Part shown: in pieces, positions 2,594 through 64,000 of the stretch
Layout: each line of letters starts with the position of its first letter
Position numbering within the stretch: the stretch's first letter is position 1
Assembly: GCF_002113885.1 (NCBI RefSeq)
Contig: NW_018403519.1
Coordinates: forward strand, 364,242-428,241
From: Mizuhopecten yessoensis
Lineage: Eukaryota
Direction of reading: 5' to 3'
DNA: 64,000 nt
Program-made: the position numbers and the translations under genes
Notes under the pieces: generated by a model
Seen by the model: only the letters and a program-made list of their open reading frames with translations
Database searches by the model: none
What the model was told of the DNA's origin: nothing

Positions 2594-5527
2594 TTACGAT
2601 ATGATAGCCTTGACCGTGCCTCTGATGTAAGTCCGACAAACTGGACACTTCCGTAAGGCCGAGGCACACATGGGACACGTGACCAAATGTCCACAAGGCA
2701 GGAACACAATACTAGCCTCCTCGTCGAGACACACCTTACATATCTTTTGTTCGCGAAGTTCTTGATTTTCCTCTGTAAGCTCATCAATACCTGTTAAACA
2801 AACAAAACATTAAGTTAAGGAAACTATCACTACAAATTCCTAAACATTCCCGTTTTCATTTAATCGAAATGGAGATGGCTTCATCGATGAAGTCCCATAG
2901 TTGGATATCGTTCCGAGACCGTGTTCAGATATTTACCAAACGTAAACTGTATGGTTATGGTAGCAGATGCTTATCATAGAATGCCAGCTTTATTTTACTG
3001 CAGATTCACATTGATGATGTTCTATGTAATAGTCTGTAACCACGTAAAGAGTTTTTAGTATTGTAGATTACAATTTGTTCACACAGTCGTAACATTAAGT
3101 CTTCCATGAGAAATCCTAAAGTACCTTTTTATGAAATTTCTATATATTGTTTAATTACCTTTCTTCGTGAGTTCAGTATCTTCACTTGTACTTTCACATT
3201 CCCTTTCCTCTTGATTATGATCGGCCTGTTTGGTTTCTGTAATGTCGTCTTCTGGGATGACATCCATGTCATCATTTTCCTCTATTTCCCAGACGATAGG
3301 CAAAAGCTTCTCAGCACACAAATCCGTGCCTGTAAAATGAACCAATGATAATAAACATATATTCATCAATTCTTTTTAAGAAATATATGGGTTAAGTGTT
3401 ATTCAAATTGACATTCAGATATTTTTTTCTTCCAAAAATCACATAATTATGTAATATGTCTCATGTTTAAAGTATTGTTTTTAAAATATTAAGGTTAAAA
3501 TATCAAATTATTACATTTTATTTACGTAATATTGAAAATACATATGAGAATAATCATCATTTATTTAACAACAATATTGACATAAATAGTTGTACAGAAG
3601 GTATGCATACCGTGACGTTTCCTGTACGCTGTAATCGCCTTTGTCAGAATGGCTTTATTGTAGCCCAGTTCCATGACGCTGAGTACAGCTGGATGTTCAA
3701 ACATGTCGATCTCTTGTCTGGACTCATCGCGCTACAAACAAAATAACATAATGAGTAATAAGACACTATTTGACAAGTATGCACTACAGGTTTGCAAAAA
3801 TGTTTGTTATCAAACATTCATGAACTGTTCGTGAAAACAGCAAGCTAGAAATTAGACATCATTCAAAATAAATCAAATTCTAATATACAGGATGCAATGG
3901 ACTTAACAATATCCTGAACAATGAACTGTGAGGGCCCCTAATTTGCACACGGTCCTTGCTTATTTCTAAAACAGCCATTATAACTGAAGCTTGCTAGAAA
4001 TATATGTTCGTAATATAATTAATTTAAACGTAAATATAATTATGTACATGTTCATTTAAATATATTGTTTTATTTGCCTTCTAATTACTTTGTAAAGACA
4101 TGCATTGCACTGTACTGCCTTAAGCTGATATAATTATTCAAAGCAGCTTTGTTATAACTCGGTACAACCGTTAATGTCTATATATTTACCTGTACATCAG
4201 GTGGTTTGATTGTTCCAGACTGGACACCCATTATGTACTTGTCGCCCTTGATCAGTTTCATGAACGGACAAAAAGGGAACCAGCGCGCATGCTCATAAAA
4301 AGGATCATCTTCCGGGTCCCATTCACGTAATCCGCCTGCGCAGTGGAAGCATCTCACGTAGTCGTTTGTTCCTATGTGTCCATACAAAAAGGAAAATCAG
4401 TAACAATATTGGAAATCAAAAGATCTAAACTTCATAGAGTTTGGAATACATAATTCATCACCTAGAAATGCATAATAATGGAGTCAGTGTGATTTATCCT
4501 TCCCGAAGGAATTGATATTACCTATATATTCGATAATTTTTACATTGAAGTAAACAATTCAAGGTTTTCCGATAGTATCCTTACCTTCATAAAAGAGACC
4601 AGCTTTAGCCAAGTCCTCGGGACGTTGTTTGAGATGCTTTGGCCAGTGTCTATATGAGTTAAGACGGGTGGCGAGTACAGAGAACTGCTCATACTTCGGT
4701 GAGACTGTCTCTAGTGTTCCAGTCGAAGTTTCGTTGGTCCTAGTATGACTAATAGAATCATGACTTGTATTATACATGTTTCCTCTGCCACTTTGATCAC
4801 GTGATTCTACTGTCTGTGTCTCGTCTGAAGGAGCTGTATCTTCTGGACTTGAAACGTGCTCAGCCTGGTGTTGTTCTAGTTGCGTTTCCTTGTCATACAT
4901 TGATTTGGCGATACGAGATTGTGCCGGTGCATTTGCCATATTTTCCTCCTTCATAGAATTGTCTGGTTTATTTTGACCTGCATCTTCACCACTTTGGTTT
5001 TGGATCTTAACAGAAGATTCTAACTCGTTTGTAGGTTTCAGTATTTCTTTGGTGGCTTCTGTTAGGTTTGAATCCTGAAATCCTATGTCAGCCGGATATT
5101 TATTGGTATTTGAGTGTTGCTGCATCTTGTCCTCAGTTCCTCGTTCTACTGACGTGTCGTTTGCTCCACCACATGCACCGGACATCAGTGCTTTCTCAGA
5201 GTTGTCTCCGTCAATACCAGCTTCAGATTCACTTGTTTGAAAGAATGGACAATTGGGAGATTTCTTCAGATGTATACATTTGGGATCATTCCCCTTTTGC
5301 CATCCACTGTACCTGAGTCCACACTGACGACACACTACCTCATCATTTTGTCCTTCGTAATGAAAGCCTGCCTCTGCCAGCACAAATGCACCTACTTCAG
5401 ATGGATAAGGGTATGAATAGAAACTTGCCAGACGTGACTGGTCGGCCATCTTTGATTTCATAGATTCGTTTCCTAATGATTGATTTTGGAACAAATAACA
5501 CCCTTCAACAGGCGGATTTATCGTCAT
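2594..5527 (-). CDS. IAP paralog 1 (BIR-BIR-UBA-RING, BIRC2/3/7-like E3 ligase), about 537 aa, 5 coding exons
   Basis: Hand-spliced complement(join(2594..2790,3159..3329,3611..3731,4190..4371,4585..5527)) = 1614 nt, all introns GT-AG. BIR1 is CRQC-x16-H-x6-C; BIR2 is [28 protein letters not shown]; the UBA-like exon reads [12 protein letters not shown]; the C3HC4 RING reads [35 protein letters not shown] and ends AIIS*. Confidence 0.93.
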
Positions 5528-5954: not shown

Positions 5955-6168
5955 ATAACATAACTATTGTATGATAGAAATGTCCTACTTTCGGGTATAA
6001 CAAAACTGTTGTATGATAGAAATGTCCTACTCTCGGGTATAACAAAACTATTGTATGATAGAAATGTCCTACTCTCGGGTATAACATAACTACTGTATGA
6101 TAGAAATGTCCTACCCTCGGGTATAACATAACTATTGTATGATAGAAATGTCCTACTCTCGGGTATAC
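5955..6168. repeat. 42-bp minisatellite, about 5 copies
   Basis: ATAACTATTGTATGATAGAAATGTCCTACTCTCGGGTATAAC with period 42. Confidence 0.95.
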
Positions 6169-9583: not shown

Positions 9584-10115
9584 CACGGAAGCAGTAAAAA
9601 CGTTTCGACATATTACAGTATTTCATTTTCATGTTGTGTTTTTTTATATATGACGTCAACTAATATAAATATAACACAACAACAAATGATAATTGTATTC
9701 ATATAGATTACATTGCATTCATAAATGTGAAAAGGGTGTTTATTATACAAATAGAGTAATCACGGAAGCAGTAAAAACGTTTCGACATATTACAGTATTT
9801 CATTTTCATGTTGTGTTTTTTTATATATGACGTCAACTAATATAAATATAACACAACAACAAATGATAATTGTATTCATATAGATTACATTGCATTCATA
9901 AATGTGAAAAGGGTGTTTATTATACAAATAGAGTAATCACGGAAGCAGTAAAAACGTTTCGACATATTACAGTATTTCATTTTCATGTTGTGTTTTTTTA
10001 TATATGACGTCAACTAATATAAATATAACACAACAACAAATGATAATTGTATTCATATAGATTACATTGCATTCATAAATGTGAAAAGGGTGTTTATTAT
10101 ACAAATAGAGTAATT
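9584..10115. repeat. 177-bp tandem repeat, 3 near-identical copies
   Basis: Units start at 9584, 9761 and 9938; each contains TGACGTCA. Confidence 0.95.
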
Positions 10116-16494: not shown

Positions 16495-16948
16495 ATCATC
16501 ACGATAACTTGTAGAATTGATACAATTACAATGTATATGTTCTTCTCTTTATCATCACGGTAACTTGTAGTCTTTATACAATGTATATGTCCTTCTCTCT
16601 ATCATCACGGTAACTTGTAGAATTGATACAATGTATATGTGCTTCTCTCTATCATCACGGTAACTTGTAGGCTTGATACAATGTATATGTCCTTCTCTCT
16701 ATCATCACGGTAACTTGTAGAATTGATACAATGTATATGTCATTCTCTCTATCATCACGGTAACTTGTAGACTTGATACAATGTATATGTCCTTCTCTCT
16801 ATCAGCACGGTAATTTGTAGACTTGATACAATGCATATGTCCTTCTCTCTATCATCACGGTAACTTGAAGACTTGATACAATGTATATGTCCTCTCTATC
16901 ATCACGGTCACTTGTAGACTTGATACAATGTATATGTCATTCTCTCTA
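16495..16948. repeat. 50-bp minisatellite, about 9 copies
   Basis: ATCATCACGGTAACTTGTAGACTTGATACAATGTATATGTCCTTCTCTCT at 16551, 16601, 16651 and onward. Confidence 0.95.
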
Positions 16949-17947
16949 TTCAGTGTACTCTCTATACGTTCTGATTCGTCAGTGGTATTTTCTCTTTCGT
17001 TTACGTTTACGAATACACGTAAATGCCTATATTCTGTGCTCGGTCATATTTATTTTGAGATTTTAGAATAGCTTACGTGTTATTTGGCGGATTTTGCTAG
17101 CTATTTTCGTACATTCCTTCACTATGTATAATAAAGTATTAACTGGCGAGTCTAAAAGTGAAAATGTCTAAACTTGTATATTACAGATATAGTTTGAAAT
17201 GATCAATTCAGATAATAATAAAGATAACAGTTTCTCTTTGGTAGTCGTTACAGCATTCAATAATTAAACATTGTGGAAACTCATTCAAGATTTGTTAATT
17301 ATACCGGGACATACATTTGGAGACCATAAAACGTAACAATAACAGAACATATAATATGAAATAGATTGAAAATTATAAAACTACTCCATATGGTTTTTAT
17401 TCCCGATATATCAATAAACGACATTGGGATGTCACCACTGTTACTGTGCATTTTAATACTTATAATTAAAATATTGAGAGATGTATTTGGCAGCAAAATG
17501 ATAAATCACAATTCTCTATGTGGTGTATATACGTTTTATTGAAGTACAATTTACTCACGATATTGACAATGATTGAGTATTAATATCTATATACTGGAGT
17601 GTTCTGTCCGAAATACAATAATGCATTGATATTTCTCTATTTTCATACACTTTGTAGAGCAGTGTCTGCCATTTAACTCATATATCCCCAGCTATTAAAT
17701 AATCATACTGAAATACCAAAAAAATGCAAATTTGAATATGGAATAATAATCATAAAAACACATTAAATATAAGTTGTTTTTAGAGGATTGTATGTTATGA
17801 TTAGTTTCTATACGTAATTCAATTTATTTATTATTGTGCAATGTACCTTTACTTTGTGTGTCTTTTCAGACCCTGTTCATTGCTGAATAAACATCTGTTA
17901 AAGTAAACGGAACAGAGTCCCATTTATGAACACGGTGTGAAACCACA

Positions 17948-22169: not shown

Positions 22170-23730
22170 AAAACAGAACGCATGTGACTGATCCATGCTT
22201 ATAGTATACACAATGTTGCAAAATAATACATCTGACTGATGTATGTTTATAATACTCCGTGTTACAAAATATTATATCTGACTGATGTATGTTTTTAGTA
22301 CATCACATGATAATTTCTAGGATATACCTTTTTAGTAGCGTGACGCTAAGAGTGGTGCCCCTTCTCCTAGGGAGCGCTGTACATATTCTACTTTCAATTC
22401 ATTGTTGTAGTCTGCAATAATGGCTTCGATATTCGGGACCGGGAATGCCGATTGCTTCGTAGAAGCTCAGCAATGCATAAAGACGAAGCAGGCGACACAA
22501 CTTGCCGTCGCAGTCCTTAAAGACTTCCTACTGGAAAGGGAAACCGTATGTGACTTAGCGGTGATTCAATCCAGTGAATTGAACGGTGTTTTGGTGGATT
22601 TCTATGCCAATATACGCAATAAGGCAAGGTTTTCGGTGGCATTTACAAGAACCATCATGTGGCAGAGAATGACAGTCATGTGATGTACTAAATCTATTAT
22701 GACCCTTTTCCGAGGGAACTGTTCTCTTATAGTGTCGTCTGGGGAGGTATAGTGCCCGAGCCGTTAGAATAGTAGTACACAGTGTTACAAAATAATATAT
22801 CTGACTGATGTATGTTTATAATACTCCGTGTTACAAAATAGTATATCTGACTGATGTATGTTTATAATACACAGTGTTACAAAATATTATATCTGACTGG
22901 TGTATGTCTATAATACACCGTGTTACAAAATAGTATATCTGACTGTTGTATGTTTATAATACACAGTGTTACAAAATATTATATCTGACTGGTGTATGTC
23001 TATAATACTCCGTGTTACATAATATTATATCTGACTGATGTATATTTATAATCCTCCGTGTTACAAAATAGTATATCTGACTGATGAATGTCTATAATAC
23101 TCCGTGTTACAAAATATTATATCTGACTGATGTATATTTATAATACTCCGTGTTACAAAATAGTATATCTGACTGATGTATGTCTATAATACTCCGTGTT
23201 ACAAAATAGTATATCTGACTGATGTATATTTATAATACTCCGTGTTACAAAATATTATATCTGACTGATGTATGTTTATAATACTCCGTGTTACAAAATA
23301 CTATATCTGACTGATGTATATTTATAATACTCCGTGTTACAAAATATTATATCTGACTGATGTATATTTATAATACACAGTGTTACAAAATATTATATTT
23401 GACTGATGTATATTTATAATACACAGTGTTACAAAATATTATATCTGACTGATGTATATTTATAATACAGTGTTACAAAACAGTATATCTGACTGATGTA
23501 TGTTTATAATACACAGTGTTACAAATTATTATATCTGACTGATGTATATTTATAATACAGTGTTACAAAACAGTATATCTGACTGTTAGCTAGCCTAAGT
23601 GGGGTTGCCAAAAAACGCCGAAGGGACTGATGTATGTCTATAATACACAGTGTTACAAAATAATATATCTGACTGATGTATGTTTGTAGAACTTTGTGTT
23701 ACAAAATAATATCTGACTAGTGCATGTTCA
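22170..23730. repeat. 46-bp minisatellite with two insertions
   Basis: TGTTACAAAATATTATATCTGACTGATGTATGTTTATAATACTCCG with period 46. Confidence 0.95.
22296..22779 (+). mobile_element. Internally deleted Crypton/DUF3504-like element inserted in the 46-bp array
   Basis: ORF 22420..22683 (KTKQATQLAVAVLKDFLLER...ELNGVLVDFYANIRNK) resembles the N-terminal part of DUF3504/Crypton recombinases; TAGTACA occurs at both ends. Confidence 0.55.
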
Positions 23731-24824
23731 TAGTATTCTTCGTTAATAATAGACGATATGGTACTGATTTCCACTTTCTGTTTCAGAGGCCACCTTTACA
23801 ATTATATCTACAAACGGCCGTCCTGAGAAATTCTCGTGAAGTTTCATATTTAGTAATTGGCATTTACTTCTGATAACATCATTTCACAACGACAGCGGTC
23901 TTCATTCTTTATGAAGTGTTAATTCTATCTTTTTAACACGTTTTCTTCCGGAATACGCAATTCCTCTCTTTTAACTAACCTTGATTGCGTGTTTACTTTG
24001 ATATATCTGTGGCACCCTGTTAGATTTGTCAATGTGGCTTCCATCAAAAACTTAAGATTATACAAAGTGGTTGCAAAAATACCAAACATGGTAGCAACTA
24101 CAATCAAAATATAACTAAAAACCTTAGCTAGCCTAAGTGGGGTTGCCAAAAAACGCCGAAGGTGAGGTTGCCAAACCCATCTTTACATTATATACTGCGA
24201 GCCGGCTGCCCCAACCCTGTTAATTAGGGGAGGTAGGTTTACCCAATGCTCTGACCAGTCGGCAAGTGTTGTCTCACTTTAACATAAACTAGCAACAACC
24301 TGCCAGGTTACAAATTATACATATTACAATAAAAAAATAACTGCCAGGTTACAAATTATACATGTTAAAATAAAAAATAAAATTAAAATTAACTAAAAAC
24401 CTTAGCTAGTGGAGTTGCCACAAAAATTGCAAACGCCATCTTAGCCAGCCTTATTGATGGTTACATCACAAAAAATGTCAATTTTGTATTGACCAAAAAA
24501 ACAGAGGGTCGGAAGTGGGTGGGATTTAAATATCAAGTTAGATTTGATGATAACGATTCGCAAGATGGCTGCCTTATGAACAAAGGGACGCGACGCTCAT
24601 GTCACCTTGACCAATTAGGGGCCAGCATCCCGATTTACGTCATCAGCAGCCAATCAATAACCTCCAATATTTTCAGAAACCATTAAGGTGTCTTGTTCCA
24701 TAATATTGTAATATTAATGTTGCTAACTTATAATAACCCTCACAATTAAATTAGTTAGATAACAAATTTAAACTTGTTATGGTGTTATGAGCATAAATTA
24801 AGCTAATTGCTTAGCTGCCTTATA

Positions 24825-40524: not shown

Positions 40525-43500
40525 TTACGATATGATAGCCTTGACCGTGCCTCTGATGTAAGTCCGACAAACTGGACACTTTCGTAAGGCCGAGGCACAC
40601 AATGGACACGTGACCAAATGTCCACATGGCAGGAAAACAATACTAGCCTCCTCTTCAAAACACACCTTACAGTTCTTCTGTTCACGAAGTTCCCGGTTTT
40701 CCTCTGTAAGTTCATCAATACCTGTGAAAATAGGACCCTGATTAAAACTAATAATGGTTTTGCATATATTAAATATTTACTCATTGATAAGAAAATAAGT
40801 TGAAATAAGTTGTTCAGTTAAATTAGTCATTCTTTTCTGGTTTAAAAAAAAATCATTTCGAATAAATTTACAAGTTTGACATCTTTGATTACCTTTATTG
40901 GTACTTTCCGCTGCCGTAACTAGTTCCGTTACATCACTTTTACTTTCACATCGCATTTCGGTTTTATTATCGTAGGTCTGTTCCTTTTCAGAAACCTCCT
41001 CGTCTGGAATGACGGCCGTGGTACCGTTTTCCGTGATTTCCCAGACAAAAGGCAATAACTTTTCGGCACTTAAATCCATTCCTATAGTGGAAAATTAGAA
41101 TAAAATGTATACAAATTCATGGGTCATTGGAAATAAGAATTAAAATCGTTTAAAATTGTTTAATTATATCCAACTTTTACAAAGTATTACAACTGTCAAT
41201 TACTTCTGAGTGTTTGTTAACGATCAAAACATCTTACGTCGTTCGATAATAATAACTTACCATGGCGTTTCCTGTAGATTGTAATTGCTTTTGTCAGAAC
41301 AGTTTTAGTGTAGCCCATCGCCATGACGCTTAGCACTGCCGGATGGTCATACAAGTTTAATTCCTTACTTTGTCCTAACTTCAGTTTGTTATCCTGCAAT
41401 ACATAAGGTGTAAGGCAATGTTTACAACATCGTGGCAAATACGAAACAGGATAATGTTCAATTGCAAATTATCATTGTAATATATGTGTTTAAACGAAAG
41501 TGTATTTCAAAGATCTATCTGTTTGGTAAGTTCTGTATCCTTTGTTGATCAGATATCTGTGGTCTATATATTTACCTGTATGTCAGGTAGATATCTGATG
41601 TACATATATACCTGTATGTCAGGTAGATATCTGATGTACATATATACCTGTATGTCAGGTATATATCTGATGTACATATTTACCTGTATGTCAGGTAGAT
41701 ATCTGCTGTACATATTTACCTGTATGTCAGGTAGATATTTGACGTACATATTTACCTGTATGTCAGGTAGATATTTGACGTACATATTTACCTGTATGTC
41801 AGGTAGATATCTGATTTACATATTTACCTGTATATCAGGTAGATATTTGATGTACATATTTGCCTGTATATCAGGTAGATATCTGATGTACATATTTACC
41901 TATATGTCAGGTAGATATCTGATGTACATATTTACCTGTATGTCAGGTAGATATCTGCTGTACATATTTACCTGTATGTCAGGTAGATATTTGATGAACA
42001 TATTTACCTGTATGTCAGGTAGATATCTGATGTACATATATACCTGTATGTCAGGTATATATCTGATGTACATATTTACCTGTATGTCAGGTAGATATTT
42101 GACGTACATATTTACCTGTATGTCAGGTAGATATTTGATGAACATATTTACCTGTATGTCAGGTAGATATCTGCTGTACATATTTACCTGTATGTCAGGT
42201 AGATATTTGATGAACATATTTACCTGTATGTCAGGTAGATATCTGCTGTACATATTTACCTGTATGTCAGGTAGATATTTGACGTACATATTTACCTGTA
42301 TGTCAGGTAGATATCTGATGTACATATGTACCTGTATGTCAGGTAGATATCTGATGTACATATTTTCCTGTATGTCAGGTAGATATTTGATGTACATATT
42401 TACATGTATATCAGGTAGATATTTGATGTACATATTTGCCTGTATATCAGGTAGATATCTGATGTACATATTTACCTGTGTGTCAGGTAGATATCTGATG
42501 TACATATTTACGTGTGTGTCAGGTAGATATCTGATGTACATATTTACCTATATGTCAGGTAGATATCTGATGTACATATTTTCCTGTATGTCAGGTAGAT
42601 ATTTGATGTACATATTTACCTGTATATCAGGTAGATATCTGATGTACATATTTACCTATATGTCAGGTAGATATCTGATGTACATATTTCCCTGTATGTC
42701 AGGTAGATATCTGATGTACATATTTCCCTGTATGTCAGGTAGATATTTGATGTACATATTTACACGGAGATCAGGTAGATATTTGATGTACATATTTACC
42801 CGTATGTCAGGTAGATATCTGATGTACATATTTCCCTGTATGTCAGGTAGATATTTGATGTACATATTTACCTGTATATCAGGTAGATATCTGATTTACA
42901 TATTTACCTGTATATCAGGTAGATATTTGATGTACATATTTACCTGTATGTCAGGTAGATATTTGATGTACATATTTACCTGTATATCAGTTGGTTTGAT
43001 TGTTCCAGACTGAACACCCGTTATGTACTTGTCGCCCTTGACCAGTCTCATGAACGGACAAAACGGGAACCAGCGCGCATGCTCATAAAAGGGGTCATCT
43101 TCCGGGTCCCATTCACGTAATCCGCCTGCGCAGTGGAAGCATCTTACGTAGTCGTTTGTTCCTGTGTATAAAGACAAATGAGAACTGAATCGTCGGTGGA
43201 AATTGAAGACATTAACACAATGTCTTAGTAATTATATATAATGTTTTCAATCAGTTTTATCGTTTAAAAAATGAAGTTTAGTGTTTTACAAGTTGATTAA
43301 TGTTTGAGGAATGTTACCATACGTTAACTAAACTATTTCTTTTTTTATATGTCAAAGGCTAATTATTGTTTGATGAATACGTGTGCAATTCTGTGTGTAT
43401 AGTTAGCAAAGAAACCTTCAACTTGAACCAAGATCGAGGGTGCTACCACCTACCCCAGGTCACATGACTGAATTTTCAGGCTAGTCTAAAGCCCCCTACT

Positions 43501-47890: not shown

Positions 47891-50800
47891 GTGTTGATGT
47901 AGATGGTGTTTAATACGGTAACACGACTGCCAAGGTAACTATGGCGACAAATCATGTATTTTGACTCAAAATGCGATTTTGTTACAAAGATATCGACATG
48001 TCGCAATAATTTGTCACGATCGGTGAAGTTAAATCATTACGGAGCACGACCACGATTTGCAATAAGTCATACGTAGGCACTGGTGATTGCAGAACATCTA
48101 TTCACACAGACAAGATATTTATAACAACCAATCACACACCCGTACTCAGCTTATTGTGTGTTTAGAAAGACTTATGCGGATTTACATTCCCTATAATAGT
48201 TCCGAAAATTACAATTTCGCATGAACAGACAATACCACGTCGCATGTTAAACCGTTAGTTGTTTTTCATTTACATCTTTAGTATCGAAGACTTACAAAAG
48301 AATCCAAAATGCGTAGAACAAAAGAAATACGAGTATAACTATAATAGACATTTGTCAATTATAAAATACGGTCCGACATTTCTTCAGCTATTCTTACCTG
48401 GAAATATTTCTTGAAATATTGATGTACCGTGTACTTTTTTTTAAAAAACAAATTGAAAAAATAGCTCGCGGATTGGTTATCCAATATTTCTATACATATA
48501 TATATATAAATAATATAATTATATGTTTTGGGCATTCAAAGCATATTCACCATTTGTAAAATAAATACGTTATCTTTTCTCTTTATCACATGAATGTGAT
48601 TGTTCATATTAAAAAATATATATAGCTTTTTTTACACTATTTGTTGGATATTAACTTTGAATACGTTTTTGCTGTGGAGAATACACACGACCATCATACA
48701 CGGCACCTTGCTTATCATTAGATGAAGGTAAACGTGAGCGTCAGGACTTGAACGTAGAAGTAAATCATTTACTAAGATGATAATTCCGTCTTTTCGTATT
48801 GCAGTGTTATCTGCCCTTGTGAGCAGGTATTGATTGAACGTCATTAGTTTGTGTGAGAATAGACGGAATACATACAACGTCGTTACCTCATACAATACGT
48901 AGGTCACCTGAATTACTCTATATTAATATTGTTGAACAAATATGTTACTGTAACAGTCGACTGTAACTCTAATGTGGAATAACCTTTTATCTGACAAATA
49001 AATGACAAAGATACTTGTTTTATCACTTAATTTCACATTTGTATCTTTTGAATAATGTTCGTTATTGAAAAACAGGAATGTCGAAAACTACTTGGTTACT
49101 TAAATTACGAAGTTACCCTGTTAAGTACGTGTACAACAATACTGGTCGACACACTACCAAGTGCTACGACACAGCTGTAAGATACTCGATTTCATGGTCG
49201 TTAAGTTTCCATTAATAGTGATAACCGTATCAGCTTCCATAAAATTTGATTTCCTGGAAATGTGTAAGTTGTTAACCAATAAGAACTCTGTCAGGATTTT
49301 TCCATTTTTAAGAAGCTTTAACTAAAGAAAGCAGTTCATTTGTAGGGAATTTTGCAATGAAAGGTTATAAATTCTCAGAATATCCATTTCGGGGATATCC
49401 ATTAAGTATTCTCTTTGGGACATACAGACAGACAGTCTACAATGGCGGAAGTCGGAAACCCCTTTGTAATAATAATCGCTATACTCCGAACCGCGTATAT
49501 CTTATCACCATATCCTTTATAACGTGAAGTATTAAAGGCTAGAAATAGACGTCGTGACCTAAACAGAACAGGTACACTTCCTACTTTAAAATATATATGG
49601 AGTGTTTTGATAGAGCCATGACTAATACATGGTCGACAGTCAACAAACAAAATTTCAAATAGTAACTGATTAAAAAAATATTAAGTAGACAATGGAACTA
49701 AACTAACAATGAATATCGTTTACAATTTAATGACATTTTTTTTTTATTTGTGAATAACAATCCATCTTCATTGACGATCTAATAAAAAGGGGGAAACTAA
49801 TCAGTTGTTTAAATTCATTTTCAATTGCTTATATACGTAGATAATTAATTTGCACAAAACAACAATGAAATATGGAATCGAATATTTTATTGATAAAACG
49901 TAAACAATAAATATACATGGAAACACACATTGCAGTCTGAATAAGATGATAGGGCAAGATCCGGGCACAAAAAGTAACAACAATGTTATATTTTTAATCA
50001 GTTAAATTTTCGTTCAAGTATGTATTTATCCTATGATATTAATTTTGTCTGAGCCAGTCGACATTATGACGGTTAAGGATGTGTTATCTATCATTGGTGA
50101 TACATATAACTACAAACCGCCTATAGAAAATAATGACTTAGTCCGTGATATGTTTTGTGCTTGCGTGTTGATGTTATTTGTAAAAATAAATCAAAAGAAT
50201 GATACAGGATTTTAAATTAAAAACAAGGCGGCTTCTGTTTAATTGTTAGACCTAATTACTTGACGGGTGTATAACTGTTTGGTTTTGTTGTTTTGGGGGT
50301 TTGTGTATTCGCGTATAGTTCACATTTGGTTTTAAGTTTTCCTTTTATTTATTACATCAAATTTCCTTGAAAATCGTTATTTAAACTTTTCAATTGTTAA
50401 ATAACATAATACATGTATTAGCATGCAATTTACACAGTTTGTTTGTGGATTATTGATACTACTAGATGCAAAATAAAGGATTATCACAAATGTGACCACT
50501 CCACTGAATGTTTTTGTGATTTATGATTATTGTTTTAAGTGTAGAAAAGCTGTTAAAAATATATATTGGGGATTTATCAGTTCAGCTGGATCATCTAGTA
50601 TTCAAATAAGACGCGTGCAGTATGTATACATACAGATCCGATTTTCTACGGAGTAACGCATCAAAAGACATTCAAATTAAAACAAAAACAATAAAACAAA
50701 AACAAAACAAAAACAAAACAAAAACAAAAGACCTTCAATCAATATTGGTGAGACTTAATTCCAAAATAAATAAATCATTTACCTGATTAAGGTTCGGTTG

Positions 50801-51347
50801 GAGGTAAACTTTTGTCCAAAAACATTTTTTTAACAAAATAACTATTTTGTGACAGGTAACAACCAAAAACAAAATAACTAAATATAATTGTCCTATGAGA
50901 AGTACAAATATCCGACTGGTACGCTGCTACAGTTTATAATTCCTATATACATGTACACAGGTATATTAAATACAAAAAAAAATATAATAGCTACCCGAAA
51001 TCCCCGTTAGCTTTTGGAAACCCATGAATCAAATATGGTGGTCGAGTCTTTTACTTTGGGACAAAATATGGTTGTACTCTCGTACATCCCAGATTGTATA
51101 ACTATTTCGGCGAACATACCAACTACCCTGGTATGACCCACAGAAATCAAAACGTCACGTTCATCAAACCGTACAATACGTGACTAATTGGACGTCTAAA
51201 TCTGAGTGTTCCGGGGAAACCTCCGACTGACGTATTGGCCATTCGCCTTAAATTCTCAATTTGTCCGTCTCTAATGTAAGTGTTAACATTAGAATAATAT
51301 ACTTAAACGTGTCCTTTTAATCTTTATTACTCTAGTTGATGGATCTT

Positions 51348-51470
51348 AATCTGAGAAAACTCACGTGGTCGGGCAAATGACCAATACCTTTTTCGTCTCC
51401 GATAGGAGAATCGAACCCAAACGCTTTCAGCAAAAGGCGTGTGCTATATCCTCTCCGCCAACTGACCATC
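51348..51470 (-). mobile_element. tRNA-derived SINE of the same family, just 3' of the paralog 4 stop codon
   Basis: On the minus strand: TGGCGGAGAGG A box, GGTTCGATTCT B box, AGGTATTGGTCATTTGCCCGACCACGTGAGTTTTCTC. Confidence 0.7.
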
Positions 51471-51551
51471 AATGATCTGGACTTCAAAAAGGCATATATC
51501 TGTCCAAATTTCATAGGTCCAGTGCAAAAGAATGGTAGCACAAGCTATGGA

Positions 51552-54500
51552 TTATGAAATGATAGCCTTGACCGTGCCCCTGATGTAAGTCCGACAAACT
51601 GGACACTTACGTAAGGCAGATGCACACATAGGACACGTGACTAAATGTCCACAAGGCAGGAACACAATACTAGCCTCCTCGTCAAGACAAACTTTACATC
51701 TCTTTTGTTCACGAAGTTCCCGATTTGCCTCTATTAATTCATCAATGACTGTAAAAAGAAAAATAATCTGATTAGGTCAAACTATTTGGAAAATTGCCTA
51801 ACGTTCTTAAAAAAGAGTCTTTCCTATTTCAGTTTTCTTCTCATTAGTTGTTCAAACATAAATTCGGAATAGAATGTATACGTGTCACATCATAAATTCC
51901 CTTTTTTATCGTTAATGCCCTTTCACATCATTAATTACCTTTCACATCATTAATTCCCTTTCACATCATTAATTACCTTTCACATCATTAATGCCCTTTC
52001 ACATCATTAATTCCCTTTCACATTATTAATGCCCTTTCACATCATTAATTGCCTTTCACATCATTAATTCCCTTTCACATCATTAATTACCTTTCAGGGC
52101 ACTTTCTACTGACGTGTCTAGTCCCATTATATCACCGATATCACCACTTCCGTTATCGTTAGTCTGCTCGTTTATAACATTGTCCTCGCCTTGAATAATA
52201 TCTATATTAGTTTCCTCTATTTCCCAGACAACAGGCAATAACTTGTCGGCACTTAATTCCATTCCTAGAATTAAACAAGAAAAAAATGAATAAACACAAA
52301 TAAATTTGCTATTGAAAATAGGACGTCAAATCAGAAGAATCGGCTATGAACCTAAACTTAAACAAACTGGTAGAACTTACAATGACTTCTGAGTGTTTAT
52401 GTGATAACCAAATATCCTACACCGTTTTAAATATAATTAATCTTACCATGGCGTTTCCTGTAGATTGTAATTGCTTTGGTCAGTATAGTTTTACTGTAGC
52501 CCATCTCCATGATGCTAAGTACAGCCGGGTGGTCAAATAAGTTTAATTCCTTACTTTGTTCTGACTTCAGTTTATCAACCGGCTACAAAAAAAAGGATAT
52601 GGCGAAATCAATACAGGTAACAACTTAGCAAACTCAAAATATGTTACTGTTCATACACACTTTATATTACTATAATGTATGTAGTTTACCGGAATTACAT
52701 TTCATCAACGGATATCTGTGTAAAGTTATATTTCCTGTTATGATAGGATTTCTGATGTACATGTTTACCTGTATATCAGGTAGATATATGATGTAAATGA
52801 TTACCTGTATATCAGGTAGATATCTGATGTACATAGTTACCTGTACATCAGGTAGATATCTGATGTACATATTTACCTGTATATCGGGTAGAAATCTGAT
52901 GAATATATTTACCTGTATATCAGGTAGAAATCTGATGTACATATTTACCTGTATATCAGGTAGATATTTGATGTACATGTTACCTGTATGTCAGGTAGAT
53001 ATTTGATGTACATGTTTACCTGTATATCAGGTAGATATCTGATGTACATATTTACCTGTTTATTTACCTGTATATCAGGTAGATATATGATGTAAATGTT
53101 TACCTGTATATCAGGTAGATATCTGATGTACATATTTACCTGTATATCAGGTAGAAATCTGATAAATATATTTACCTGTATATCAGGTAGATACTTGATG
53201 TACATATTTACCTGTATATCAGGTAGATACTTGATGTACATATTTACCTGTATATCAGGTAGATACTTGATGTACATATTTACCTGTATATCAGGTAGAT
53301 ACTTGATGTACATATTTACCTGTATATCAGGTAGATACTTGATGTACATATTTACCTGTATATCAGGTAGATACTTGATGTACATATTTACCTGTATATC
53401 AGGTAGATACTTGATGTACATATTTACCTGTATATCAGGTAGATACTTGATGTACATATTTACCTGTATATCAGGTAGATACTTGATGTACATATTTACC
53501 TGTATATCAGGTAGATACTTGATGTACATATTTACCTGTATATCAGGTAGATACTTGATGTACATATTTACCTGTATATCAGGTAGATACTTGATGTACA
53601 TATTTACCTGTATATCAGGTAGATACTTGATGTACATATTTACCTGTATATCAGGTAGATACTTGATGTACATATTTACCTGTATATCAGGTAGATACTT
53701 GATGTACATATTTACCTGTATATCAGGTAGATACTTGATGTACATATTTACCTGTATATCAGGTAGATACTTGATGTACATATTTACCTGTATATCAGGT
53801 AGATACTTGATGTACATATTTACCTGTATATCAGGTAGATACTTGATGTACATATTTACCTGTATATCAGGTAGATACTTGATGTACATATTTACCTGTA
53901 TATCAGGTAGATACTTGATGTACATATTTACCTGTATATCAGGTAGATACTTGATGTACATATTTACCTGTATATCAGGTAGATACTTGATGTACATATT
54001 TACCTGTATATCAGGTAGATACTTGATGTACATATTTACCTGTATATCAGGTAGATACTTGATGTACATATTTACCTGTATATCAGGTAGATACTTGATG
54101 TACATATTTACCTGTATATCAGGTAGATACTTGATGTACATATTTACCTGTATATCAGGTAGATACTTGATGTACATATTTACCTGTATATCAGGTAGAT
54201 ACTTGATGTACATATTTACCTGTATATCAGGTAGATACTTGATGTACATATTTACCTGTATAACAGTTGGTTTGATCGTTCCAGACTGGACACCCATTAT
54301 GAACTTGTCGCCCTTGATCAGTCTCATGAACGGACAAAAAGGGAACCAGCGCGCATGCTCATAAAAGGGGTCATCTTCCGGTTCCCATTCACGTAATCCC
54401 CCTGCGCAGTGGAAGCATCTCACGTAGTCGTTTGTTTCTGATTGTCAAGATAAAAAGAACTAATTAGCCAGTATAAATTACAGACACATTCTACATAGTG

Positions 54501-55386
54501 TCTTGATTGGTATCTTGATGCAGAAACATATAAAGCATATACGTCTCTGCTTGATGTAAATATATATTGTAAACACGAAATAATTATCCAAAGTTTATGT
54601 AATTTAAAAGCTTGATAAATGTAAGTGAACGAGAAGAAGTAAGTGAGAGACAATAAGCTTAATAACCTTACCTTCATAAAAGAGACCAGCTTTTGCCAAG
54701 TCCTCGGGACGTTGTTTGAGATGTTGTGGCCAGTGTCTATATGAGGTAAGACGGGTGGCGAGTACAGAGAACTGCTGATACTTCGGTGAGACTGTCTCTA
54801 GTGATCCAGTCGATGTCTGGATTGTTATTGTGTCAGAATGACCTGCAGAGTCGTGACCTGTATTAGACAAGACTTCTCTGTTGTTTTGGTCAATTTGCTC
54901 TACTGTTTGTGTCTCGTTAGGAGCTGCAATAATCGCCGACTCTTCCGTTCCTGAAAAGGGTTCAGATTCGTGTTGTTGCTTTGTCCTGTCTTCACGTTTT
55001 CGTTCTGCCACTACGTTTACCGGTTTACTACATGCACCAGAGAAAAGTACGTTTCTTTGTTGAAAGTAGTCCATGAAAACATTTTCAGATTTTCCTTTTT
55101 GAAAGAATGGACAACAGGGGAAAATTTTCATATGCAGTTTTTTTGGGTCATCTCCCTTTTGCCATCCACTGTACCTGAGTCCACACTGACGACACATTAC
55201 CTCATCATTTTGTCCATCGTAATGAAAGCCTGCTTCTGCCAGTTCAAAGGCACTTACTTCAGACGTGTAAGGGTATGAAAAGAAACTTGCCATTCGTGAC
55301 TGGTCAGCCATCTCTGGTTTCCTGGGTTCGTTTTCCAGTATGCCATTTGGATACATTATGGAACTCTTTGCCGACGACGTAATCAT
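51552..55386 (-). CDS. IAP paralog 4 (BIR-BIR-UBA-RING), about 467 aa using the proximal donors; shorter inter-BIR linker
   Basis: complement(join(51552..51748,52091..52264,52447..52582,54256..54437,54672..55386)) = 1404 nt, in frame. Coding exon 1 is 192 nt shorter than in paralogs 2 and 3. Confidence 0.92.
51912..52096 (-). repeat. 19-bp minisatellite made of the duplicated exon-4 donor of paralog 4 (about 10 copies)
   Basis: Unit AAAG|GTAATTAATGATGTG; most copies have GG or GC in place of GT. Confidence 0.93.
52735..54265 (-). repeat. 36-bp minisatellite of the same family (about 43 donor positions), paralog 4 intron
   Basis: Junctions every 36 bp from 54256 to 53068, then 53056, 53020 and 52984; after a 1-bp deletion, 52949 down to 52769. 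The core units are identical ([12 protein letters not shown]). Confidence 0.97.
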
Positions 55387-61644: not shown

Positions 61645-64000
61645 CTGTGTCAGTGTAACAGCTACACTGAGTATGATAGTGTGTATGCCAGTGTAACAGT
61701 TACATTGAGTATGATAGTATGCCAGTGTAACAGTTACATTGAGTATGATAGTATGTATGCCAGTGTAACAGTTACATTGTTACATTGAGTATGATAATAT
61801 GCCAGTGTAACAGTTACATTGAGTATGATAGTATGCCAGTGTAACAGTTACATTGAGTATGATAGTATGTATGCCAGTGTAACAGTTACATTGAGTATGA
61901 TAGTATGTATGCCAGTGTAACAGTTACATTGAGTATGATAGTATGTATGCCAGTGTAACAGTTACATTGAGTATGATAGTATGTATGCCAGTGTAACAGT
62001 TACATTGAGTATGATAGTATGTATGCCAGTGTAACAGTTACATTGAGTATGATAGTATGTATGCCAGTGTAACAGTTACATTGAGTATGATAGTATGTAT
62101 GCCAGTGTAACAGTTACATTGAGTATGATAGTATGTATGCCAGTGTAACAGTTACATTGAGTATGATAGTATGTATGCCAGTGTAACAGTTACATTGAGT
62201 ATGATAGTATGTATGCCAGTGTAACAGTTACATTGAGTATGATAGTATGTATGCCAGTGTAACAGTTACATTGAGTATGATAGTATGTATGCCAGTGTAA
62301 CAGTTACATTGAGTATGATAGTATGTATGCCAGTGTAACAGTTACATTGAGTATGATAGTATGTATGCCAGTGTAACAGTTACATTGAGTATGATAGTAT
62401 GTATGCCAGTGTAACAGTTACATTGAGTATGATAGTATGTATGCCAGTGTAACAGTTACATTGAGTATGATAGTATGTATGCCAGTGTAACAGTTACATT
62501 GAGTATGATAGTATGTATGCCAGTGTAACAGTTACATTGAGTATGATAGTATGTATGCCAGTGTAACAGTTACATTGAGTATGATAGTATGTATGCCAGT
62601 GTAACAGTTACATTGAGTATGATAGTATGTATGCCAGTGTAACAGTTACATTGAGTATGATAGTATGTATGCCAGTGTAACAGTTACATTGAGTATGATA
62701 GTATGTATGCCAGTGTAACAGTTACATTGAGTATGATAGTATGTATGCCAGTGTAACAGTTACATTGAGTATGATAGTATGTATGCCAGTGTAACAGTTA
62801 CATTGAGTATGATAGTATGTATGCCAGTGTAACAGTTACATTGAGTATGATAGTATGTATGCCAGTGTAACAGTTACATTGAGTATGATAGTATGTATGC
62901 CAGTGTAACAGTTACATTGAGTATGATAGTATGTATGCCAGTGTAACAGTTACATTGAGTATGATAGTATGTATGCCAGTGTAACAGTTACATTGAGTAT
63001 GATAGTATGTATGCCAGTGTAACAGTTACATTGAGTATGATAGTATGTATGCCAGTGTAACAGTTACATTGAGTATGATAGTATGTATGCCAGTGTAACA
63101 GTTACATTGAGTATGATAGTATGTATGCCAGTGTAACAGTTACATTGAGTATGATAGTATGTATGCCAGTGTAACAGTTACATTGAGTATGATAGTATGT
63201 ATGCCAGTGTAACAGTTACATTGAGTATGATAGTATGTATGCCAGTGTAACAGTTACATTGAGTATGATAGTATGTATGCCAGTGTAACAGTTACATTGA
63301 GTATGATAGTATGTATGCCAGTGTAACAGTTACATTGAGTATGATAGTATGTATGCCAGTGTAACAGTTACATTGAGTATGATAGTATGTATGCCAGTGT
63401 AACAGTTACATTGAGTATGATAGTATGTATGCCAGTGTAACAGTTACATTGAGTATGATAGTATGTATGCCAGTGTAACAGTTACATTGAGTATGATAGT
63501 ATGTATGCCAGTGTAACAGTTACATTGAGTATGATAGTATGTATGCCAGTGTAACAGTTACATTGAGTATGATAGTATGTATGCCAGTGTAACAGTTACA
63601 TTGAGTATGATAGTATGTATGCCAGTGTAACAGTTACATTGAGTATGATAGTATGTATGCCAGTGTAACAGTTACATTGAGTATGATAGTATGTATGCCA
63701 GTGTAACAGTTACATTGAGTATGATAGTATGTATGCCAGTGTAACAGTTACATTGAGTATGATAGTATGTATGCCAGTGTAACAGTTACATTGAGTATGA
63801 TAGTATGTATGCCAGTGTAACAGTTACATTGAGTATGATAGTATGTATGCCAGTGTAACAGTTACATTGAGTATGATAGTATGTATGCCAGTGTAACAGT
63901 TACATTGAGTATGATAGTATGTATGCCAGTGTAACAGTTACATTGAGTATGATAGTATGTATGCCAGTGTAACAGTTACATTGAGTATGATAGTATGTAT
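61645..64000. repeat. 38-bp satellite, about 62 copies, running off the window end
   Basis: GCCAGTGTAACAGTTACATTGAGTATGATAGTATGTAT, with the internal palindrome TGTAAC-A-GTTACA. Confidence 0.98.

What the first reader, a model, noticed from the sequence alone, without database searches (positions are those of the whole stretch)
52769..54256. Splice-donor ladder: a 5' splice site amplified into an in-frame 36-bp array between BIR2 and UBA
Seen: the repeat unit is the exon/intron junction itself (…GATATACAG|GTAAAT…). The intron is phase 0 and the unit is 12 codons ([12 protein letters not shown]). In paralog 4, 37 consecutive GT donors (54256 down to 52984) are in frame and stop-free, and each could splice to the UBA exon at 52582; six more lie beyond a 1-bp frameshift. 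Inference: alternative donor choice would give IAP isoforms carrying 0 to 424 extra residues between the substrate-binding BIR2 and the UBA-RING module, while the distal frameshifted donors would give truncated or NMD products. That would make a VNTR act as a splicing rheostat. I know of no description of this in IAP genes, but I cannot search the literature.
Basis: partly seen in the sequence, partly recalled or inferred. Interest (0 to 1): 0.9.

Follow-up and report, generated by a model that had tools for sequence, protein, structure and literature searches.

The report
Splice-donor minisatellite in scallop IAP intron
An intron of a Yesso scallop apoptosis-inhibitor gene opens with 43 tandem copies of its own exon-intron junction, but the RNA and gene models available use only the first copy, and this kind of repeat is already known from human genes and amphioxus.

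Summary
In a Mizuhopecten yessoensis IAP gene (minus strand), the intron after the BIR2 exon begins with 43 CAG|GTAA donors spaced 36 bp apart. Thirty units are identical. A 499-codon stop-free frame runs through 37 donors, then a 1-bp deletion breaks it.

The "splicing rheostat" reading is not supported.
- An RNA contig joins the true exon end directly to the next exon, so the first donor is used.
- No contig joins a repeat unit to that exon.
- All three annotated models (paralogs 2, 3 and 4) use the first donor.
- The older sister array in paralog 3 has five in-frame stops and seven lost GTs.

The window preserves the history of the array: one donor in paralog 1, two in paralog 2, and about 40 in paralogs 3 and 4. 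Ylistrum and Argopecten orthologues have none.

This is a junction-spanning "mirage" minisatellite. The kind is known from human F7 IVS7, IFI6 (6-16), CBS, LMNB2 and PDGFA, and from amphioxus Adh3 and globins. A second one (19 bp, 11 units) sits at intron 4 of the same gene.

The scan has already reported the same kind three times on other pieces of this genome. Minor use of the first pseudo-donors and the true copy number remain untested.

The parts
54673..55386 (-). Exon 1 of IAP paralog 4 (P0001 aa 1-238: BIR1, linker, start of BIR2)
   Evidence: tblastn 100% identity; donor GAAG|GTAAGG read
54256..54437 (-). Exon 2 (BIR2 C-terminal half), ending in the authentic donor CAG|GTAAAT at 54256|54255
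   Evidence: Pfam BIR at aa 212-276; RNA contig loose end at the acceptor carries this exon's tail
53176..54255 (-). 30 identical 36-bp units, each ending in a copy of the exon tail and followed by GTAAAT (pseudo-donors 2-31)
52768..53175 (-). Older, diverged 3' part of the array: about 12 variant units, one 12-nt partial unit, and a 1-bp deletion near 52984 that ends the open frame
   Evidence: RNA? contigs at depth 5-11 cover parts of it, consistent with unspliced RNA or DNA carry-over
52583..52767 (-). Non-repeated tail of intron 2 with pyrimidine tract and acceptor ttttttttgtag|
   Evidence: homologous to the intron of paralog 2 and of the C2206 copy
52447..52582 (-). Exon 3 (UBA-like segment, P0001 aa 300-345)
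   Evidence: joint 52263/52446 in RNA contigs; UBA not confirmed by Pfam or PDB
52091..52264 (-). Exon 4
51885..52090 (-). Second junction-spanning minisatellite in the same gene: 11 units of 19 bp (GTAATTAATGATGTGAAAG) starting at the exon 4 donor. Only 3 of 11 keep GT.
   Evidence: RNA joint 51748->52091 uses the first donor
51552..51748 (-). Exon 5 (RING)
41576..42979 (-). Sister array in paralog 3: 39 units of exactly 36 bp, 5 in-frame stops, 7 GT lost, 21 of 39 donor 9-mers intact (the authentic donor and 20 of 38 pseudo-donors; the donor after the last unit, also intact, is a 40th). The annotated model uses the first donor 42980 -> 41393.
28449..28484 (-). Paralog 2: a single extra 36-bp unit (two donors), the founding duplication state
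   Evidence: same state in a pseudogene copy L013:4030-4066
4181..4217 (-). Paralog 1: the unduplicated junction ...CCACCTGATGTACAG|GTAAATATATAG (one donor, no array)

Best explanation
This is a junction-spanning ('mirage', F7-IVS7-type) intronic minisatellite. It is most likely a by-product of DNA slippage and unequal exchange, not a device for making isoforms. A roughly 36-bp tandem duplication covering the last 13-27 nt of the BIR2 exon and the first 9-12 nt of the intron arose in the Mizuhopecten IAP cluster; that state is kept in paralog 2. It then expanded to about 40 copies in paralogs 3 and 4, and paralog 4 recently amplified one variant unit 30 times next to the exon. The spliceosome uses the most upstream donor, as shown experimentally for the human F7 array (5'-to-3' scanning or exon definition). 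The downstream copies are silent or nearly silent pseudo-sites that decay by mutation. Shown here: the anatomy, the paralog series, first-donor use in the RNA available and in the gene models, and decay in the older array. Inferred: the slippage mechanism, the reason the first donor wins, and neutrality.
For: Anatomy. The unit contains the exon tail plus the donor (alignment A1). Series of 1, 2, 39 and 43 copies in four paralogs of one window. In the whole genome the unit occurs at high identity only at these loci and at one two-copy pseudogene copy. There is no array in the Ylistrum and Argopecten orthologues. RNA: an X1 contig (depth 52.5) spans exon 4, exon 3 and 96 nt of the true exon 2 tail; no unit->52582 joint appears in X1 or X3; array pieces sit at depth 5-11. 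The annotated proteins P0001, P0002 and P0004 use the first donor, and their clusters have one member each. There is no coding constraint: paralog 3 has 5 in-frame stops, and the 9-nt donor core carries 9 of 19 variant types in 9 of 36 positions (binomial P=0.029). No Pfam family matches the repeat translation, and its GRAVY is 0.02 against -0.9 and -0.4 for the gene's real linkers. A second such array at intron 4 of the same gene has lost 8 of 10 pseudo-donor GTs, and its first donor is used in RNA. Precedent: PMC1557585 (F7, IFI6, CBS, LMNB2, PDGFA) and PMC3087553 (amphioxus mirages do not disturb normal splicing).
Against: RNA support is thin. One contig-level run (X1, labelled only 'RNA?', though it carries spliced joints) shows the junction. 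Contigs drop rare variants, so pseudo-donor use below roughly 10-20% would be missed. The two raw-read RNA runs gave 2 and 5 reads and say nothing. In human IFI6 and CBS the first two pseudo-sites are used, so some use here is plausible. In paralog 4 all 43 donors keep GT and the unit is a multiple of three, so in-frame products would escape NMD. The donor-decay statistic is weak and its variants are not independent events.
Confidence: 0.8

Rival explanations
1. Limited alternative donor use, as in human IFI6 and CBS. Besides the first donor, the first one or two pseudo-donors are used at low level. This would give IAP isoforms with 12 or 24 extra residues in the BIR2-to-UBA-like linker. The rest of the array stays silent.
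For: Pseudo-donors 2-31 are identical to the authentic one over the 9-nt core and in frame. PMC1557585 reports such use in IFI6 and CBS. Contig data cannot exclude minor forms.
Against: No such joint or loose end in X1 or X3. No longer isoform sits in the 90% clusters of P0001, P0002 or P0004. F7, with 37-bp spacing close to the spacing here, shows no pseudo-site use.
Confidence: 0.15
2. Donor choice ranges over the whole in-frame ladder and yields isoforms with 0 to 424 extra residues, tuned by VNTR length.
For: A 499-codon open frame across 37 donors.
Against: The open frame is accounted for by 30 identical young units. The sister array has stops from unit 3 on. There is no RNA or annotation support. 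The repeat peptide is hydrophobic and aromatic, unlike the gene's own linkers, and matches no family. In every studied precedent at most the first two pseudo-sites are used.
Confidence: 0.02
3. A regulatory U1-binding array. The reiterated donors are not spliced but bind U1 snRNP, and copy number tunes splicing efficiency, nuclear retention or expression of the paralog. This parallels the reported association of F7 IVS7 repeat alleles with factor VII levels (from my own knowledge, not checked here).
For: 43 intact GT donors in paralog 4. Two arrays at two donors of the same gene. Intronic pieces are present at 10-20% of exon depth in X1.
Against: Nothing here measures expression against copy number. 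The donors decay in paralog 3 and in the intron 4 array, which argues against selection to keep them. Paralogs 1 and 2 do without an array.
Confidence: 0.08
4. Assembly artefact. The array, or at least its size, is produced by short-read assembly or gap filling.
For: 30 perfectly identical units (1,080 bp) in an assembly of 82,659 contigs.
Against: The array itself is real. A diverged sister array with higher-order structure exists in paralog 3. Variant units are recovered in independent runs' contigs. 20 runs from 9 studies hold at least part of the stretch's sampled words. The two-copy state occurs at two loci. Only the copy number is in doubt.
Confidence: 0.03

Closest known systems
Human F7 intron 7 37-bp VNTR (Borensztajn et al. 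2006, PMC1557585)
   Same: An intronic minisatellite whose first monomer spans the exon-intron boundary, so the authentic donor is followed by identical pseudo-donors. Unit length is nearly the same (37 versus 36 bp). Only the most upstream donor is used.
   Different: F7 has 5-9 copies and takes only 4 nt from the exon. Here there are about 43 copies with at least 13 nt of exon tail, and the unit is a multiple of three so the ladder is in frame. Pseudo-site competence was shown by mutagenesis for F7 and is untested here.
Human IFI6 (6-16) intron 2 minisatellite and CBS IVS13 31-bp VNTR (cited in PMC1557585, refs 9-11)
   Same: Reiterated donors at an exon-intron border, with many copies (25 pseudo-sites in IFI6, 15-20 repeats in CBS).
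   Different: [quoted passage not shown] No such use was seen here, within the limits of contig data.
Amphioxus 'mirage' minisatellites (Adh3, globins; PMC3087553)
   Same: Tandem duplications of exon-intron boundaries in an invertebrate. Units are 10-160 bp, regular splicing is unaffected, copy number is unstable, and several occur per gene family.
   Different: Different phylum and genes. Here four paralogs preserve successive copy-number states.
Human LMNB2 and PDGFA junction-reiterating repeats (cited in PMC1557585, refs 12-13)
   Same: [quoted passage not shown]
   Different: Longer units (100 and 81 bp).
Other mirage-type arrays in the same scallop genome (earlier scan notes s1-507900, s1-510879, s1-514839)
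   Same: The same kind of repeat in the same genome, spliced at the first donor where that was examined.
   Different: Other genes (IFI27-like, TPR and others). Those notes were not re-examined here.

Membership tests
Junction-spanning ('mirage' / F7-IVS7-type) minisatellite | Head-to-tail array of 10-160-bp units lying in an intron and abutting the exon | tested here: met
   TRF period 36, about 42 units, 52753-54266; unit list
Junction-spanning ('mirage' / F7-IVS7-type) minisatellite | The first monomer spans the exon-intron boundary, so the donor sequence is reiterated | tested here: met
   Exon tail ACC..CTGATATACAG plus GTAAATATGT aligns with the unit (A1). 43 CAG|GTA sites.
Junction-spanning ('mirage' / F7-IVS7-type) minisatellite | The authentic (most upstream) donor is the one used; pseudo-sites are silent or minor | tested here: met
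   The X1 contig joins the exon 2 tail to exon 3. No unit-to-exon-3 joint in X1 or X3. Models P0001, P0002 and P0004 use the first donor. Sensitivity to minor forms is low.
Junction-spanning ('mirage' / F7-IVS7-type) minisatellite | Copy-number polymorphism or instability (VNTR behaviour) | not testable with these tools
Copy number differs between paralogs (2, 39, 43), but alleles were not compared.
Alternative-5'-splice-site ladder producing protein isoforms (IFI6-type use) | Transcripts that join pseudo-donors to the downstream exon | tested here: not met
   None in the contigs of X1 or X3. The raw RNA runs were uninformative. No longer isoform in the protein clusters. A short-ORF search found nothing.
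Coding tandem repeat (exonic VNTR) | Open frame maintained by selection across copies and paralogs | tested here: not met
   Paralog 3 array: 5 in-frame stops. Paralog 4: a frameshift after unit 36. The variant units differ mostly by non-synonymous changes.
IAP (BIRC2/3-like: BIR-BIR-UBA-RING) | Two BIR domains and a C-terminal RING | tested here: met
   Pfam BIR with two stretches and zf-C3HC4_3 at 417-460 in P0001
IAP (BIRC2/3-like: BIR-BIR-UBA-RING) | UBA domain between BIR2 and RING | tested here: inconclusive
   No Pfam hit at E<=0.01 and no PDB sequence hit for aa 285-405. The label rests on position and an MGY-type motif only.

The most novel reading that the evidence does not exclude
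Because the unit is 36 bp and the intron is phase 0, the first pseudo-donors could be used in some tissue or stress state, as in human IFI6 and CBS. That would add 12 or 24 residues to the BIR2-to-UBA-like linker of one IAP paralog. Array length could also tune splicing efficiency or expression through U1 binding. Either would make a fast-mutating VNTR a source of heritable variation in an expanded stress-response gene family.
Probability: 0.12. Interest if true: 0.45.

Novelty: new member of a known kind. Interest (0 to 1): 0.22.

Why it matters
As it stands this is a well-preserved example of a known oddity rather than a new mechanism. It has three uses. First, four neighbouring paralogs keep the 1-copy, 2-copy and about 40-copy states, and orthologues in two other scallops have none. 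This shows step by step how a splice junction turns into a minisatellite and how the extra donors then decay. Second, with 43 identical in-frame donors it would be a demanding natural test of the "most upstream donor wins" rule outside mammals. Third, gene predictors and short-read assemblers can go wrong at such introns, which matters for annotating the expanded IAP family of bivalves.

Tried and rejected
Following the tool's own advice I laid the part with fewer copies (50800-53283). That spent the single call, so the exon 2 side and the first pseudo-donors were not examined directly.
2. The raw-read RNA runs X21 and X24 gave 2 and 5 reads and are uninformative.
3. A protein search with the 499-aa read-through frame found only ordinary IAPs, none with the repeat.
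4. A second search with a 99-aa query (exon 2 plus 3 units), meant to catch partial ORFs from transcript contigs, found 2 unrelated BIR fragments. This is a blank with no weight.
5. I did not build or search the joined (spliced) sequences for alternative donors. Spliced models were to be handled exon by exon, so that step was left out.
6. The idea that the unit is a genome-wide satellite or a transposon fragment that landed in the intron is rejected. Matches of about 90% identity or more lie only at the IAP loci. The 70-77% matches elsewhere are unrelated 31-41-bp minisatellites sharing short motifs, and their selection by my query makes any motif sharing uninformative.
7. Recursive splice sites were considered, since each unit has CAG|GTAAAT. 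They are not favoured: the 15 nt before the AG are not a pyrimidine tract and a 1.7-kb intron needs no ratcheting. This was not tested.
8. A UBA assignment for exon 3 was not confirmed by Pfam or PDB sequence search.
9. The findings look-up by place near the window returned nothing.
10. Turri et al. 1995 (PMC306954) is not held, so IFI6 details are cited second-hand from PMC1557585.

Full report
**What is there.** The window is part of Mizuhopecten yessoensis contig C192. It carries four tandem IAP paralogs on the minus strand. Paralog 4 encodes the annotated protein P0001 (467 aa, 100% identical exon by exon). Its exons are 55386-54673, 54437-54256, 52582-52447, 52264-52091 and 51748-51552. 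Pfam finds two BIR stretches and a RING. The 'UBA' label for exon 3 was not confirmed by Pfam or by a PDB sequence search.

Exon 2 ends ...ACTGTTATACAG at 54256. It is followed by 36-bp units GTAAATATGTACATCAAGTATCTACCTGATATACAG.
- I count 43 CAG|GTA sites from 54255 to 52768, and 30 units are identical.
- The intron is phase 0 and the unit reads [12 protein letters not shown].
- The frame is open for 499 codons (52948-54444).
- 37 donors are in frame. A 35-nt unit near 52984 then shifts the frame, so the last six donors follow in-frame TAA codons.
- The acceptor at 52583|52582 starts a whole codon.

**Origin.** The window keeps the history of the array.
- Paralog 1 has the plain junction ...CCACCTGATGTACAG|GTAAATATATAG, with one donor.
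- Paralog 2 has exactly one extra 36-bp unit, so two donors.
- A degenerate IAP copy on contig C2206 has the same two-donor state.
- Paralog 3 has 39 units and paralog 4 about 42.
- An alignment of the four junctions with rotated units shows the unit holds at least the last 13 nt of the exon plus the first 10 nt of the intron. Weaker similarity continues further into the exon.
- A search of the whole genome with four units finds matches of about 90% identity or more only at these loci. Weaker matches (70-77%) are unrelated minisatellites of 31-41 bp.
- The orthologous introns of Ylistrum balloti and Argopecten irradians are short, carry one donor and have no array.

The array therefore arose in place, within the Mizuhopecten lineage, from a duplication of the junction. 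In paralog 4 the variant units at the 3' end resemble paralog 3 units (ATCAGATATC and ATCAAATATC types). The 30 identical units next to the exon carry a private variant (ATCAAGTATC), which indicates a recent amplification of one unit.

**Is the ladder used?**
I laid 50800-53283, which holds three perfect units, the variant units, the acceptor and exons 3-5.
- In run X1 a 408-nt contig at depth 52.5 covers exon 4, then exon 3, and runs on for 96 letters. Read on the minus strand these are ...AGTCTGGAACGATCAAACCAACTGATATACAG. This is the tail of exon 2 of paralog 4: GGAACGATC is specific to paralog 4 and CAAACCAAC is exon sequence, not unit sequence. It carries one allelic difference from the window (GAT for GTT, D for V). 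So the first donor is joined to exon 3.
- No joint from any unit to 52582 and no other loose end at the acceptor was listed for X1 or X3. Unspliced pieces of the intron and variant units lie at depth 5-11.
- The raw RNA runs X21 and X24 had almost no reads on the gene.
- The annotated proteins of paralog 4 (TVIQ|PVDKLK), paralog 3 (TDIQ|DNKLKL) and paralog 2 (PDIQ|PDYKLK) all use the first donor. Each sits alone in its 90% cluster, so no +12-aa isoform is on record.
- Limits: one run shows the junction, and contigs lose rare variants. Minor use of pseudo-donors is not excluded.
- I did not build or search joined sequences for alternative donors.

**Is the frame maintained?** It is not.
- The paralog 3 array has in-frame stops in units 3, 9, 12, 30 and 33, so at most two extra units could be read there.
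- Seven of its units have lost GT, through three different substitutions at the same T. Only 21 of its 39 donor 9-mers are intact.
- The 9-nt donor core carries 9 of the 19 variant types in 9 of 36 positions (binomial P=0.029). This is suggestive only, because variants spread by unequal exchange are not independent events.
- The long open frame in paralog 4 follows from 30 identical young copies.
- The repeat peptide matches no Pfam family. It is far less polar (GRAVY 0.02) than the gene's own linkers (-0.9 and -0.4).

**A second case in the same gene.** Intron 4 opens with 11 units of 19 bp (GTAATTAATGATGTGAAAG) that repeat the exon 4 tail GAAAG plus the donor. Only three units keep GT. RNA contigs in X1 and X3 splice from the first donor (joint 51748->52091).

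**Comparison with what is known.** PMC1557585 describes minisatellites whose first monomer spans an exon-intron boundary, so that the donor is reiterated.
- Human F7 IVS7: 37 bp, 5-9 copies. Only the most upstream site is used. The pseudo-sites are competent but lose to 5'-to-3' scanning.
- IFI6/6-16: 25 pseudo-sites, with the first two used.
- CBS IVS13: 15-20 repeats, with two pseudo-sites used.
- LMNB2 and PDGFA: only the authentic site is used.

PMC3087553 describes the same structures in amphioxus as 'mirages'. [quoted passage not shown] The scallop array meets the defining features I could test. Copy-number polymorphism could not be tested. PMC7893105 on the Yesso scallop IAP expansion does not mention splicing or introns.

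The scan's earlier notes report the same kind of repeat three times elsewhere in this genome. I used them as a lead to the term 'mirage' and checked that paper myself. Their claim of genome-wide enrichment at junctions was not tested here.

**Verdict.** The rheostat interpretation is not supported. This is a large, in-frame, well-documented new member of a known kind. The most likely mechanism is slippage and unequal exchange at the DNA level, with first-donor selection at the RNA level. Open points are minor use of pseudo-donors 2-3, any effect of array length on expression, and the true copy number in a fragmented assembly. The N run at 34225-34552 was left untouched.

Noticed in passing
window 51885-52090 (-): A second junction-spanning minisatellite in the same gene: 11 units of 19 bp that repeat the exon 4 tail plus the donor. 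8 of 10 pseudo-donors have lost GT, and RNA contigs use the first donor.
   Followed up: partly
window 55386-54673 joined to 4372-2597 (-): The annotated protein P0003 joins exon 1 of paralog 4 to exons 2-5 of paralog 1, about 50 kb downstream, skipping paralogs 3 and 2. It is either a read-through or chimeric transcript or an annotation artefact.
   Followed up: no
L021:4410-4610 (Argopecten irradians orthologue): The acceptor end of the same intron appears to be duplicated once, judged by eye on the sequence (about 120 bp, including ttaag|AAGGAGCAG). This gives a pseudo-acceptor upstream of the real one, an acceptor-side two-copy 'mirage'.
   Followed up: partly
L013:3960-4560 (G000 contig C2206): A degenerate IAP fragment with the two-donor state of paralog 2, a homologous intron and a frame-disrupted exon 3. 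It shows that the two-copy state predates that duplication.
   Followed up: partly
window 61651-64000, 22782-23732, 16527-16949, 9584-10114, 5955-6167: The window is dense in other minisatellites: 38 bp x 62 running off the window end, 46 bp x 21, 50 bp x 8.5, 177 bp x 3 at 100% identity, and 42 bp x 5. Every other genomic stretch I fetched was similarly full of 29-42-bp arrays.
   Followed up: no
P0011 and P0012 (other scallop IAPs): The stretch between BIR2 and the HPAVLSVM motif carries short peptide repeats in other paralogs (GASAMTSKQGNV/SASAMASKQEDV in P0011; KHEFPSAP/KREFPSAL/KREFPSE in P0012). Tandem duplication in this linker region seems recurrent and is sometimes coding.
   Followed up: no
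window 54265 (-), exon 2: An allelic difference in the RNA contig of run X1: GAT (Asp) where the window has GTT (Val), 8 nt before the donor. It makes the exon tail identical to the unit tail over 11 nt.
   Followed up: no
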